Positions 7,061 to 61,879 of a stretch of 64,000 nt of DNA are shown in pieces. Made by a program: the position numbers and the translations under genes. Origin of the DNA: Fimbriosthenelais zetlandica (taxonomy: Eukaryota); the NCBI GenBank assembly GCA_977030845.1, contig OZ365116.1, positions 3,038,001 to 3,102,000 of the forward strand, read 5' to 3'. Under the pieces are notes generated by a model. The model worked only from the letters and a program-made list of their open reading frames with translations, was not told where the DNA came from and ran no database searches. How positions within the stretch are numbered: the stretch's first letter is position 1; every line of letters starts with the position of its first letter.

Positions 7061-8999
7061 AAAAATATTATCCCCAACAATAAGTATTCTAATCGTATGT
7101 AATCCCTTTGCCATTTGATGATAGGCCATATAATGGAGGAATTATAAAGTGCATTATATTTTTTAAAGACGGCTATTATTGCAGCTCTGATATTTCCATA
7201 CAAATTGCCTCTGTAATGCATCTGTGTGTGCGATTTGAGATGGAAATTTCTATGGGTTTTGCTTTGTAAATAACACTTAGAAAATTACAACTCTTTCACT
7301 TACTGTTAAATGTCAAAAGTTAGAAGAAAATAAGCTTCACATATCCAATGAACAACTGGATTGGACAATGGTCGTATTGACTTCAATTTCAGTTTGCAAT
7401 TTTTGCGAACCTTCTGATAGGAGATCGCACTAGTGACTTGTATACAAATAAATATACATGATTGATGAGAGAAAGCTGGCCTGTTTTTCATGCCGGTAGA
7501 CTTGTCGTACAGATATTTGAGTTTGTCTGATTGAGGATCAGTCATTTGTTCTCCCTCACATATTGATTGCTCTTGGCAGGACTCATTCAGAGTGTAGTTG
7601 ACCATGTAACAGTTCCACCCAAACAGAACCAGTCATTACATGGCTTCATTGCAACTACTCCAACAACACCAAACCCCAGATGGGTATGAGAACTATGTGG
7701 CATAAAATGTTCCTATTGTGGGAAGAAAAATACGTTCAAGTGGAAAATACCCTCTGGGGTCTGCTCTCTACTGATGGAATTACAAACCTCTTGTTCGTAA
7801 AAACGGCCAGGAGTCCCTGACGCCTACTGTGTGGCCTAGTAGTGCTGAAATTACTGCACTTCTACTAGTCTGATTCGGAAATTAAACCTGTTTTCCTGAC
7901 AGGATTTATTCATTCACTAAGTACCTATTACCATCTAAACAGCTGAGCTGTTTCCCCAATTAACTTTTTCTCTCGGGTTTACTGCGCTTAAAGGAGGTTT
8001 AAAAATGTTATTCTCTGCCTTTCTCTAATAAATTTGTCAAAGGTCGTGTTGTTCCAGGGGAGTGCCAGCCTCGGAAGAAATGAAAACTAATGTGAAGTTT
8101 GTAGCGGGGAGCATTCCACAGACATTAAATGATGCACATTGATGGTAATTATGGTAATTCTTGTGGAACTCCAGTCGGAATCTAATGTGGAACTGACCTT
8201 TGAAACAGTACAAGCAATGAATAGGATTTAATTGAGAGGACTGGGATGAATGCATGCATAATGAAGTGATCAATGTGACAATGTACATCTCACGCTCATC
8301 CACCCTTCCTTGTTAAGCTGTCAACTCAATAAGTTGACAATCAAAAATCAACTCAATTTGTCAGAATCTAATTTTATCACTGGATATTCCGCTATGTACA
8401 TGTACTCGACATGTTCATAGTCTCAGGTACATGGACTGTTTCCATGAACTACAGCTACAAAACAGGCATGTAGTTATTGTCTATGAGGAATGATTGTCGG
8501 GTGAGATGATAATGTCAAATGTTATGGCTCCATTCTTCTCCAACCTTGGCCTTATCTACCGGTAATTCTGGACATTTCTATGACAAAAAGATTTATTGGT
8601 TTGCGGAGAGAGTTAGCTCAACATTGAACGACATTCCGTGCTTTATAAAGACACAGTGATTAATTATACAGGCTCTTTATTGTGCTTCTCACTTTATTGT
8701 GCTTCTACAAAAGGTTTTTTCTTGAAACAATGAAGCTCATGAATGTGTGCCATTCATGGTGAGGTGGTTACAGATCGTGGACATGTTAATATCCCGCACT
8801 CTGTGCATATTCAAACCCTCTGAGGATCGTTTGGTGGGATGGCTATTGTGCTCGCCCCACATTCCGTGAGCTATGGCTCCTGTTGTGACAACCCTAACTC
8901 CATTGCATGTTCAGCAGACACCAATGACCATAGAGAAATCAGATTCAGCCAGTATTTTGCACATGTGATGGATGTTCCCTTGTCCATGTCATGGAAATG

Positions 9000-59103: not shown

Positions 59104-59144
59104 ATGGCAGGACAACCTCTGAGTTGGGGCAAGTATTTCTTTAG
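59104..59144 (+). CDS. MPC1: MPC1 exon 1 coding part (41 nt)
   Basis: aacATGGCAGGA...TTCTTTAG|gtgagt; [13 protein letters not shown](S), phase 2. Confidence 0.85.
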
Positions 59145-61102
59145 GTGAGTACACGTCTTACATAGCTATATTCTGTAAAATTCGCCGGTAAATCAAGAAG
59201 TTTACGCAATGCCAGGGTCACGGGAGAGGCCCTCAGCCAGGCTCAGGCCCTGGCTGCAGCCTGCTGACTGTAAACTGTGGACCCCTCCTACCAGTATCAC
59301 AGAGAACCATTTATTAAACCAAGAGAGATTAAAAACATTTGCCCCCAAGTTGTCTTGAACTTGGAGGACACTGTATAGCGTAGCCATAGACATAGGGCAA
59401 TCTGTGACCAGAGACTGGCACTGGCAGTCAATGTCAATGACACTATGTCAGTATGTGCCCCCCCCCCCCCCACCCCCCAGAACCCTGACCCCAACCCCCG
59501 GACTGAGGTGGACCAGAAAAACCTGGGGATTCAGATTTGTCAGTAACAGTATCTTAATTCACCACCTCAGGAATTATATTACATTATACAGGTTCATTAC
59601 AGGAAACCATATTAAAACCTCGGGATTTCAGACTAATAGTAATAATTTTTAGGACACCTGCGGGTTGGAATTCAGACTAAGATTTTTAATTTTATATAAG
59701 CTGGGAGCACCACCCAAGTCCAAGACAAGATAATCTAACTCAACATAAATCCACGATTATATAATGAATGTTCAAGAATCAATCATGTTTTTTTTTCATT
59801 TGTGATTTCCACTCCTACAACTTCTCACTGATTGGCCGACTCTACAGCACTGTAAGTATAAAATATTCTCCTGGTATAAACTTATTTTGCTTGAAAAACT
59901 GTAGGCCTATCCGAAACACAGTTCAAAGATAAGAATATCATAGCGATATGCATGGTCTTGGCAAGTCCTCGATCGATAAAAAGACCTATTTTGGCATTGT
60001 ATTTAACACACCCATTTTGAAAAATATGCAATGCAATAGAATGTATGCATGGAATTTCTTTTGTTTGTTTTTACTGGTTTTAATTATGTCGGTCCTTTTT
60101 TTCAGCATTTCTGGGGGCCTGTAGCTAACTGGGGGTTACCCCTAGCTGCCATAGCCGATGCTCAGGATAACCCAGAAAAAATAAGTGGAAAAATGACAAC
60201 AGGTGAGTTTATCTTTCATGTATTCATCCTGGTTGGCTATAGGTGTTACTATAACATCTGACAAAAAATGAGGCGGTTTGCTGGCACATGACTTTTACCT
60301 GTATACTGAGTCATGCACCAGACATTTCCGAAACTAGTGTTCTGCTCTAGTTGGCCCTGGCCTCTCATGCTGACATGCATAATACCTTCCTTCTCTGCCA
60401 AATTTACAATGAATACACATCTGCCATATCTGTACCTATATATTTGATTTTAAAAGTGAATGTAATGCCTGTAAAATTCAAGAATATTTATTCAGCATAT
60501 TTATTTGTATATCTATATTTTAAATATATTTTGAATAAATTATATTTGATTTTAAAAGTAACCTAGATGAAATTCAAGGGCAAGACATAGATTTCTTTTT
60601 CAGCATATTTATGTGTAAACCATCAGCATGTTTTTAAGTGTATCGTTATTTTCCAGCCCTGTGTATCTACTCGGGCTTGTTCATGCGGTTCGCCTGGAAG
60701 GTGCAGCCCAGGAATATGTTACTCTTCGCCTGTCATTTCACTAATGAAATCACACAACTAGTGCAGCTTACACGATTCTTCGACTACCAGTCAGTATACT
60801 TATTTTTTTAATGCTAATCTTTAATTATCGTTAATTATCGAGGCCTCTGATTAGTTCACACCTTCATATACTTATCACCTTTCACAGTTTCTCAACCTCT
60901 AGACATTTCACTGTAATTTTACGGTCTCGTAACGTCATCTTGTCGTAATTTCTTTTAAAATCGTGACATTTTTCTTCATTTCAGTTATAGGCAAACTCCT
61001 GAGCAGCAGGCAGCCACAGTGACATTCTTTACAGAGAAGGCAGCAGCGAAGAAACTAGCGGTGGAACAGAAGGCAGCGGCTAAACAAGGGATGAAACAGT
61101 AG
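59104..61102 (+). CDS. MPC1: Mitochondrial pyruvate carrier 1, complete, 130 aa, 5 exons including a 4-nt microexon
   Basis: join(59104..59144,59848..59851,60106..60202,60657..60789,60985..61102) = 393 nt. [95 protein letters not shown]... The [12 protein letters not shown] and [19 protein letters not shown] signatures identify MPC1 rather than MPC2. Confidence 0.96.
59848..59851 (+). CDS. MPC1: MPC1 4-nt microexon (CACT)
   Basis: ctcactgat (branch-like)...tctacag|CACT|gtaagt; supplies AG+C = Ser and ACT = Thr, restoring the frame to S-T-H-F-W-G-P. Confidence 0.92.
60106..60202 (+). CDS. MPC1: MPC1 exon 3 (97 nt)
   Basis: ttttttcag|CATTTCTGG...ACAACAG|gtgagt; [32 protein letters not shown]. 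Confidence 0.97.
60657..60789 (+). CDS. MPC1: MPC1 exon 4 (133 nt)
   Basis: ttccag|CCCTGTGT...TACCA|gtcagt; (A)[43 protein letters not shown]. Confidence 0.95.
60985..61102 (+). CDS. MPC1: MPC1 exon 5 (118 nt to the TAG stop; alternative acceptor at 60991)
   Basis: catttcag|TTATAG|GCAAACT; (H)[38 protein letters not shown]. Confidence 0.8.
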
Positions 61103-61665: not shown

Positions 61666-61879
61666 CAGTCAAACCTCACTGTAGTGAACACTGTGGAACT
61701 GAGAAAAAGTATTAACTATTTGAATATATATACTGTATTCAGAGGGAGTCGTATACGACACCTCAGGAAGGTCGGACTGTGGGAAGGTGTTCACTAGATG
61801 GAGGTGTTCACTATATGGAGGTGTTCACTATATGGGGGTGTTCACTATATGGAGGTGTTCATTAATGGAGGTTTTACTG
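61666..61879. mobile_element. Tc1/mariner-pogo-type MITE with an internal 17-bp tandem repeat
   Basis: TA|CAGTCAAACCTC...GAGGTTTTACTG|TA (12-bp TIR, 1 mismatch, TA TSD); about five copies of GGTGTTCACTATATGGA at 61786-61870. Confidence 0.8.

What the first reader, a model, noticed from the sequence alone, without database searches (positions are those of the whole stretch)
59848..59851. 4-nt microexon is required to make MPC1 and could act as an on/off switch for mitochondrial pyruvate import
Seen: exon 1 ends in phase 2 (TTT AG|gt) while the HFWGP exon starts in phase 0, so they cannot join directly. The one solution I found in intron 1 is tctacag|CACT|gtaagt, with strong splice sites and a branch-like CTGAT about 16-20 nt upstream; it gives the conserved S-T-H-F-W. 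Skipping it yields [19 protein letters not shown] (TAG at 60122-60124), a likely NMD target. Recalled, to verify: human MPC1 also has a 4-nt second exon plus 97- and 133-nt exons, the same sizes as here. Inference: an ancient bilaterian frame-shifting microexon that automated annotation probably misses, and a candidate post-transcriptional metabolic switch.
Basis: partly seen in the sequence, partly recalled or inferred. Interest (0 to 1): 0.8.

Follow-up and report, generated by a model that had tools for sequence, protein, structure and literature searches.

The report
Four-base coding exon of MPC1
The four bases CACT are very probably a real exon that the mitochondrial pyruvate carrier gene MPC1 needs to stay in frame; it is the same tiny exon already described in human MPC1 and is older than animals, but nothing indicates that it works as an on/off switch.

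Summary
On the + strand lies a five-exon MPC1 gene with coding exons of 41, 4, 97, 133 and 118 nt. Exon 1 ends in phase 2 and the HFWGP exon starts in phase 0. CACT at 59848-59851 (ctctacag|CACT|gtaagt) restores the frame and supplies the conserved Ser-Thr.

The site pattern YAG-YACN-GTAAGT occurs once in the 64-kb window, against 0.01 expected. It also occurs exactly once in the matching intron of nine other animal loci.

Exact protein-to-genome mapping found the same 4-nt exon in:
- an annelid, a brachiopod, a bivalve, a snail and a tick
- a sea urchin, a hemichordate and an eel
- the placozoan Trichoplax
- the fungus Allomyces

So the exon predates the animal-fungus split, not just Bilateria.

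The human 4-bp exon 2 is already published (Koh et al. 2023, PMC9929638). It is constitutive there, and no skipped mRNA appears even when nonsense-mediated decay (NMD) is blocked. The switch idea therefore has no support; a tapeworm and one fungus have fused the 4 nt into exon 1.

Several automated models in other species do miss the exon. No RNA run was listed for this genome, so inclusion here is inferred, not shown.

The parts
59104..59144 (+). MPC1 exon 1, coding part (41 nt, [13 protein letters not shown] plus AG). It ends in phase 2 before the donor gtgagt.
   Evidence: The W-x-x-Y-F motif and the AG|gt phase-2 end match Lingula, Diadema and the other orthologues.
59145..59847 (+). Intron 1 (703 nt).
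   Evidence: It holds a single AG|YACN|GY site.
59768..59847 (+). Intronic ATG whose open frame runs through the acceptor into the microexon (M...GRLYST). This is a likely trap for gene predictors.
   Evidence: The same kind of false N-terminus appears in the Biomphalaria and blue tit models.
59782..59828 (+). Pyrimidine-rich tract set back from the acceptor. The best 20-nt window is -66 to -47 (16/20 Y); the proximal -23 to -4 has only 12/20.
   Evidence: It parallels the human tract at -67 to -43 (PMC9929638).
59828..59832 (+). CTGAT branch-like motif (A at -17). A second yTnAy motif has its A at -21.
   Evidence: Use as a branch point was not tested.
59840..59847 (+). Acceptor ctctacag.
59848..59851 (+). 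4-nt exon CACT. It supplies the third base of Ser (AG+C) and the Thr codon ACT.
   Evidence: The orthologous 4-nt exon was found in 10 other species.
59852..59857 (+). Donor gtaagt, a perfect match to the consensus.
   Evidence: GTAAGT is identical in nine other animal loci.
59852..60105 (+). Intron 2 (254 nt).
60106..60202 (+). Exon 3 (97 nt), [12 protein letters not shown]..., starting in phase 0.
   Evidence: Pfam MPC PF03650, E 2.8e-11, profile positions 16-46.
60122..60124 (+). TAG that comes into frame if the 4-nt exon is skipped.
60657..60789 (+). Exon 4 (133 nt).
   Evidence: Pfam MPC, E 6.8e-13, profile positions 49-91. 734 library hits.
60985..61102 (+). Exon 5, coding part with stop. 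The acceptor at 60985 gives D-Y-H-Y, as in Lingula N-Y-H-Y.

Best explanation
This is the MPC1 (mitochondrial pyruvate carrier subunit 1) gene of an invertebrate, probably a lophotrochozoan. CACT at 59848-59851 is its obligatory second coding exon and the orthologue of human MPC1 exon 2.

Shown from sequence and comparison:
- Exon 1 ends two bases into a codon and exon 3 starts on a codon boundary. Four bases are therefore needed, and these four give the conserved Ser-Thr before HFWGP.
- The same 4-nt exon sits at the same place in ten other species, from a blastoclad fungus to an eel. Its sequence is YACN. The donor is the perfect GTAAGT in all nine invertebrate animal loci checked, GTGAGG in the eel and GTTCGT in Allomyces.

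Inferred from the human work and from the architecture:
- The exon is included in essentially every transcript.
- A perfect U1-binding donor, together with a pyrimidine tract and probably a branch point set about 50-70 nt upstream, would let both splice sites of a 4-nt exon be recognised without clashing. Alternatively the two short introns are removed one after the other.
- The exon has most likely stayed separate only because removing it needs a precise intron loss, which did happen in tapeworms and some fungi. A regulatory role is not needed to explain it.
For: - Gene model and frames.
- Pfam MPC hits on exons 3 and 4.
- Uniqueness of the site.
- Exact spliced mapping of annotated orthologous proteins onto their genomes gave these coding exon sizes:
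  - Owenia 83+/4/97/133/121
  - Lingula 53/4/97/133/112 (two loci)
  - Mactra 68/4/97/133/175
  - Ixodes 68/4/16/81/133/22
  - Diadema 170/4/16/81/136/19
  - Anguilla 71/4/97/133/19
  - Trichoplax 68/4/16/81/188
  - Allomyces 68/4/16/81/136/97
- Biomphalaria and Glandiceps carry the same site although their models miss it.
- YAGYACNGTAAGT occurs once, on the gene strand, in each of the nine animal loci L003-L011.
- No other exon ending ...ST|GT with an MPC-like peptide lies in the 30 kb upstream.
- The human 4-bp exon is constitutive and depends on 67 nt of upstream intron plus a strong 5' splice site: PMC9929638.
- The pyrimidine tract is displaced here and in six other animals.
Against: - There is no transcript evidence from this genome. 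No sequencing run was listed, so read laying could not be used. The spliced junction was not found in metagenome contigs.
- Constitutive inclusion is carried over from human and mouse cell lines.
- The branch point and the order of intron removal are untested.
- Owenia, Lingula, Trichoplax and Allomyces do not show a displaced pyrimidine tract (in Owenia no tract stands out at all), so that feature is not universal.
Confidence: 0.9

Rival explanations
1. Regulated switch. The 4-nt exon is skipped in some tissue or state. The frameshifted mRNA stops at 60122-60124 and is destroyed by nonsense-mediated decay, which turns pyruvate import down.
For: - Skipping does create an early stop with two exon junctions downstream.
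- The exon 1 donor and exon 3 acceptor are both strong, so direct joining is physically possible.
- The exon has been kept separate for a very long time.
Against: - In human and mouse cells no skipped form is detectable, even with cycloheximide or with MPC1 induced by PGC-1alpha (PMC9929638).
- The perfect GTAAGT donor in nearly all animals checked points to selection for full inclusion.
- Hydatigera (and, judging from protein similarity alone, its cestode relatives) and Tieghemiomyces have fused the 4 nt into exon 1.
- None of 19 public contigs with the generic skipped junction is an MPC1. In the same source (JGI), 23 of the 27 MPC1 proteins listed carry ...MST-HFWGP. This is a weak test, because assemblies drop rare forms.
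Confidence: 0.06
2. The real N-terminus is different. Transcription starts inside intron 1 and translation begins at the ATG at 59768. The open frame reads through the acceptor into CACT, so there is no 4-nt exon in that mRNA. This form would be an alternative isoform or the only one.
For: - The frame is open from 59768 to 59851 and flows into the gtaagt donor.
- GenBank and RefSeq models of two Biomphalaria species and an Ensembl-derived blue tit model have exactly this form.
Against: - The peptide it adds is pyrimidine-tract translation (runs of Phe, Cys, Ile) and resembles no MPC1 N-terminus.
- Exon 1 at 59104 encodes the conserved W-x-x-Y-F motif and ends in the conserved phase.
- For Biomphalaria glabrata another database entry has the normal ...EFRDWILST N-terminus.
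Confidence: 0.03
3. Chance look-alike. The gene is a decaying copy or uses an unseen exon outside the window, and CACT is not spliced in.
For: No RNA evidence was available for this genome.
Against: - All five coding pieces are intact with canonical sites, and the protein is 65% identical to Owenia MPC1 over 120 residues.
- The site is expected 0.01 times per 64 kb and sits exactly where ten other species have it.
Confidence: 0.01

Closest known systems
Human MPC1 exon 2, the 4-bp microexon (Koh, Shin and Kim 2023, Mol Ther Nucleic Acids, PMC9929638)
   Same: - Same gene and same position, between a phase-2 exon 1 and the exon that starts with His of HFWGP.
- Same length.
- Strong donor.
- Pyrimidine tract set back from the acceptor: -66 to -47 here, -67 to -43 in human.
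- A vertebrate (eel) shows the same 4/97/133 series as this window.
   Different: - The flanking introns are short here (703 and 254 nt), against more than 12 kb and 3 kb in human. Intron definition or stepwise removal is therefore easier.
- The TGTCTG direct repeat described in human was not seen.
- Inclusion, branch points and dependence on the 67-nt region are measured in human and untested here.
Recursive splice sites and RS-exons (e.g. Blazquez et al. 2018, PMC6224609, seen)
   Same: An acceptor is followed almost at once by a consensus GTAAGT donor. After exon 1 is joined, a 5' splice site is rebuilt right at the junction. Koh et al. report that the human site still splices when the exon is cut to 0 bp.
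   Different: Four bases are kept in the mRNA and are coding and essential. No evidence here bears on the order of the two splicing steps.
Neuronal SRRM3/4-dependent microexons (3-27 nt)
   Same: Very short exon that is deeply conserved.
   Different: - Those exons are nearly always multiples of 3, alternatively spliced and tissue-specific.
- This one is 4 nt, shifts the frame and sits in a housekeeping gene.
- No TGC motif lies in the last 28 nt before the acceptor.
Other short frame-shifting coding microexons in human (TNNI1 4 bp, KSR1 and TMEM237 5 bp, MUSK 7 bp; PMC9929638)
   Same: Constitutive coding exons whose length is not a multiple of 3 and whose loss would shift the frame.
   Different: Different genes. 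Only MPC1 kept full inclusion in shortened minigenes in that study.

Membership tests
Mitochondrial pyruvate carrier family (Pfam PF03650), MPC1 branch | Significant match to the MPC profile | tested here: met
   Exon 3 peptide E 2.8e-11 and exon 4 peptide E 6.8e-13, both above the 27-bit cut-off.
Mitochondrial pyruvate carrier family (Pfam PF03650), MPC1 branch | MPC1-type [12 protein letters not shown] motif and best matches to proteins named MPC1 | tested here: met
   The joined model has the motif. The nearest full-length relatives are named MPC1, and Owenia matches 78/120. Lingula MPC1, used as a stand-in for this orthologue group, scores 130 bits against solved MPC1 chains and about 35 bits against MPC2 chains.
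Orthologue of the published MPC1 4-bp exon 2 | Exon of exactly 4 nt between a phase-2 exon end and a phase-0 exon start, giving Ser(third base)-Thr | tested here: met
Orthologue of the published MPC1 4-bp exon 2 | Same neighbouring exon sizes as vertebrate MPC1 (97 and 133 nt) | tested here: met
   Anguilla 71/4/97/133/19 against window 41/4/97/133/118. The human sizes themselves were not checked.
Orthologue of the published MPC1 4-bp exon 2 | Constitutive inclusion in mRNA | not testable with these tools
   No sequencing run was listed. The included junction is absent from metagenome contigs.
Orthologue of the published MPC1 4-bp exon 2 | Distal pyrimidine tract and distal branch points upstream of the exon | tested here: inconclusive
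   The tract is at -66 to -47 here and is similarly displaced in six other animals, but not in Lingula, Trichoplax, Allomyces or Owenia. Branch points cannot be read from sequence.
NMD-coupled regulatory cassette (unproductive splicing switch) | A detectable skipped isoform whose level changes with conditions | not testable with these tools
   No reads were available. In human it was tested and not met (PMC9929638). No skipped MPC1 contig was found in a public collection.
Neuronal SRRM4-type microexon | Frame-preserving length (multiple of 3) and a UGC enhancer next to the acceptor | tested here: not met
   The length is 4 nt, and there is no TGC within 28 nt upstream.

The most novel reading that the evidence does not exclude
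The 4-nt MPC1 exon was already a separate exon in the common ancestor of animals and fungi, together with a 16-nt exon right after it. It has been kept that way for about a billion years because occasional skipping serves as a frameshift-plus-decay brake on pyruvate import in some cell state that the human cell-line work did not sample.

The first half, the great age, is well supported here. The second half, a selected regulatory use, is only not excluded.
Probability: 0.06. Interest if true: 0.75.

Novelty: already known. Interest (0 to 1): 0.3.

Why it matters
- For annotation: without the 4-nt exon, MPC1 is called as a truncated or false-N-terminus protein. That has happened in several public genomes, and this window carries the same trap (the intronic ATG at 59768).
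- For biology: the exon itself is known from human.
The same 4 nt, in the same phase, with an exon 1 coding part of 68 nt and a following 16-nt exon, are found in Trichoplax and in the fungus Allomyces. That makes it one of the shortest exons traceable to before the animal-fungus split. I found no paper saying so in the library searched.
- It also offers a natural series of very short-intron versions of the 'exon island' that Koh et al. propose as a splicing tool.

Tried and rejected
- RNA evidence: two run searches listed nothing, one on the whole gene asking for RNA runs and one on the last exon plus downstream sequence asking for any kind. Read laying could therefore not be used.
- Junction search: an exact search for this species' exon1-CACT-exon3 junction in metagenome contigs found nothing.
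- Skipped-junction search: the generic pattern gave 19 contigs, none of them MPC1.
- The full-length spliced protein has no reference, so I did not type it into the database tools. As a result I could not look up whether this genome's own annotation holds the exon, and could not find its closest relatives. I used the exon-4 peptide instead.
- The top exon-4 hits are unnamed ORF fragments, and the cluster look-up gave no organism. The species stays unidentified.
- Other frame-restoring exons in intron 1: 112 formal candidates, none but CACT with good sites or a conserved product.
- Another upstream exon ending ...ST|GT: none is plausible within 30 kb.
- Conserved CSTF2-MPC1 head-to-head neighbourhood: seen in Owenia, Lingula and Ixodes, but tblastn found no CSTF2-like sequence in the window.
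- No cnidarian, sponge, insect, plant or MPC2 locus could be fetched.

Full report
**What is in the sequence**

On the + strand between 59104 and 61102 lies a compact gene.
- The ATG is at 59104. A stop lies six codons upstream in the same frame.
- The first coding piece runs to 59144 and ends TTT AG|gtgagt, two bases into a codon.
- The next recognisable piece, 60106-60202 (97 nt), begins CAT TTC TGG GGG CCT on a codon boundary behind the acceptor tttttcag.
- Then come 60657-60789 (133 nt) and 60985-61102 (118 nt with the stop).
- The peptides of the 97- and 133-nt exons hit Pfam MPC (PF03650) at E 2.8e-11 and 6.8e-13. They cover profile positions 16-46 and 49-91.

Exon 1 and exon 3 cannot be joined directly. 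Doing so gives [19 protein letters not shown] and then TAG at 60122-60124. Reading exon 1 on into the intron gives AGG TGA at once.

The four bases CACT at 59848-59851 are flanked by ctctacag and gtaagt. Putting them in gives a 393-nt frame and a 130-residue protein with ...[18 protein letters not shown].

**Is it more than chance?**

- Formally, 112 AG...GT/GC segments in intron 1 restore the frame without a stop. 'The only solution' is therefore too strong as written.
- CACT is, however, the only AG|YACN|GY site in the intron, which is the only way to obtain Ser-Thr.
- A bare YAG-N4-GTRAGT is not rare: 3 matches in the window against 1.9 expected.
- The full YAG-YACN-GTAAGT occurs once in 64 kb on both strands, at 59845-59857, against 0.01 expected.
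- No other place in the 30 kb upstream ends an open frame with Ser-Thr before a good donor and carries an MPC-like peptide.

**Comparison with other genomes**

A search with the exon-4 peptide and two searches with full-length relatives gave named MPC1 proteins. For twelve of them I fetched the genomic locus. I mapped each protein onto its DNA with an exact spliced-alignment script that takes the solution with the fewest exons.

| Species (group) | Coding exon sizes (nt) | Site of the 4-nt exon |
|---|---|---|
| This window | 41/4/97/133/118 | ctctacag\|CACT\|gtaagt |
| Owenia fusiformis (annelid) | 83+/4/97/133/121 | cag\|CACT\|gtaagt |
| Lingula anatina (brachiopod, two loci) | 53/4/97/133/112 | cag\|CACT\|gtaagt |
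| Mactra antiquata (bivalve) | 68/4/97/133/175 | TACT |
| Ixodes scapularis (tick) | 68/4/16/81/133/22 | CACG |
| Diadema antillarum (sea urchin) | 170/4/16/81/136/19 | CACG |
| Anguilla anguilla (eel) | 71/4/97/133/19 | CACG\|gtgagg |
| Trichoplax (placozoan) | 68/4/16/81/188 | CACG\|gtaagt |
| Allomyces macrogynus (blastoclad fungus) | 68/4/16/81/136/97 | ccaccag\|CACC\|gttcgt |

- In each intron only one candidate had both a YAG acceptor and a consensus donor.
- The pattern YAGYACNGTAAGT occurs exactly once, on the gene strand, in each of the nine animal loci L003-L011.
- Two lineages lack the split. The cestode Hydatigera has 63/97/133/91, with the 4 nt fused to exon 1. The fungus Tieghemiomyces has two exons and keeps only the phase-1 intron after the 97-nt block.

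The 4-nt exon is therefore not a bilaterian invention. It was present before animals and fungi parted, next to a 16-nt exon that has since merged into the 97-nt exon in this genome, in Owenia, Lingula, Mactra and Hydatigera, and in the eel.

**What is already known**

A full-text search found one paper on the subject: Koh, Shin and Kim 2023 (PMC9929638). It reports the following.
- Human MPC1 exon 2 is 4 bp and is constitutively included.
- No skipped transcript is seen in several human and mouse cell lines, not even after cycloheximide or when MPC1 is induced by PGC-1alpha.
- Inclusion depends on 67 nt of upstream intron and on a strong 5' splice site.
- The pyrimidine tract lies at -67 to -43, and the main branch points lie at about -68 and -64.
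- Splicing persists when the exon is shortened to 0 bp.

The paper mentions cross-species conservation of the exon and its proximal intron. I did not see which species its supplementary figure covers. I confirmed the 97- and 133-nt sizes only in the eel.

**How it most likely works here**

Shown: the four bases are required for the frame, and they are the conserved orthologous exon.

Inferred: they are included in essentially all transcripts.

The architecture resembles the human one.
- The donor is a perfect GTAAGT.
- The richest pyrimidine window lies at -66 to -47 (16 of 20), while the last 20 nt before the acceptor are only 12 of 20 pyrimidines.
- Ixodes, Diadema, Glandiceps, Anguilla, Biomphalaria and Mactra show the same displacement. 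Lingula, Trichoplax and Allomyces do not, and Owenia has no marked tract.
- A plausible reading is that moving the branch point and tract away leaves room for U1 at a donor only four bases from the acceptor.
- With introns of 703 and 254 nt, stepwise removal is an equally good possibility. Removing intron 2 first would turn the 4-nt exon into a 101-nt one.
Whether it or a distal site is used cannot be told from sequence.

**The switch idea**

- Skipping would indeed give an early stop with two exon junctions downstream.
- Everything available argues against regular use:
  - the human and mouse data;
  - the near-universal perfect donor;
  - the loss of the split in tapeworms and a fungus without loss of the gene;
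  - the absence of any MPC1 among 19 public contigs carrying the generic skipped junction ATGAG-CAYTTYTGGGGNCC, while 23 of 27 MPC1 proteins from that same source carry ...MST-HFWGP.
- The last test is weak, because assemblies drop rare forms.
- In this organism the idea is untested. No sequencing run was listed, and the included junction was not in metagenome contigs either. I put the idea at about 6%.

**Annotation**

- The Glandiceps talaboti RefSeq model shifts the exon 1 donor by 4 nt and reads ...LMRL-HFWGP. An unannotated atcatcag|TACT|gtaagt lies at L009:8026-8029.
- The Biomphalaria pfeifferi and B. glabrata models start at an intronic ATG and read through the acceptor into CACA.
- The Trichoplax sp. 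H2 model starts in the intron before HFWGP.
- A zebra finch entry has a frameshifted exon 1 joined to exon 3. A Kryptolebias entry and a blue tit entry show similar errors.

This window has the same trap. An ATG at 59768 opens a frame that runs through the acceptor into CACT. I could not check this genome's own annotation, because the spliced protein has no reference and I did not type it in.

**Organism**

It was not identified.
- The best full-length match is Owenia (78 of 120 identical).
- The short N-terminus (..[10 protein letters not shown]) most resembles Lingula (..SEWIKYFC-ST).
- A lophotrochozoan is likely.

**Verdict**

A real but already described feature. The 'metabolic switch' reading is unsupported.

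Noticed in passing
L012:1149-1152 and L011:5886-5889: The same 4-nt MPC1 exon is present in the fungus Allomyces macrogynus (CACC) and in Trichoplax (CACG). In both it is followed by a 16-nt exon, and the exon 1 coding part is 68 nt, as also in Ixodes and Mactra. This places two consecutive microexons before the animal-fungus split. I found no paper stating this.
   Followed up: partly
L009:2072-2075 and 8026-8029: The Glandiceps talaboti RefSeq MPC1 model uses a donor shifted 4 nt and gives ...LMRL-HFWGP. A perfect unannotated atcatcag|TACT|gtaagt lies in the intron.
   Followed up: yes
L003:4001-4063; proteins P0138, P0268, P0090, P0087, P0104, P0150: Public MPC1 models with false N-termini caused by the microexon. 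Both Biomphalaria species start at an intronic ATG. Trichoplax sp. H2, zebra finch (frameshifted exon 1), blue tit and Kryptolebias are also affected.
   Followed up: partly
L004:1-6008, L005:1-2916, L006:1-2920, L010:1-1535: A CSTF2-like gene (RRM_1, CSTF2_hinge) lies head-to-head just upstream of MPC1 in Owenia, Lingula and Ixodes. This may be an old shared promoter region. tblastn found no such sequence in this window.
   Followed up: partly
L001:3001-3063: The cestode Hydatigera taeniaeformis has lost the intron between exon 1 and the 4-nt exon (63-nt first exon ending AGC ACG) but keeps the phase-0 intron before HFWGP.
   Followed up: yes
P0061 (Rhizomucor pusillus): The annotated protein has five extra residues (VCGKP) exactly between S-T and HFWGP, at the position of the conserved intron. 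It is probably a mis-set splice site. The locus was not fetched.
   Followed up: no
window 59459-59480: A long C run (about 20 C with one A) inside MPC1 intron 1.
   Followed up: no
window 61785-61875: About five tandem copies of a unit of about 17 nt (ggaggtgttcactata-like), some 700 nt downstream of the MPC1 stop codon.
   Followed up: no
L005 and L006: Lingula anatina carries two near-identical MPC1 loci with the same neighbours on two contigs. They are haplotigs or a very recent duplication. Isoform X2 (P0023) starts inside intron 2 and lacks S-T.
   Followed up: no
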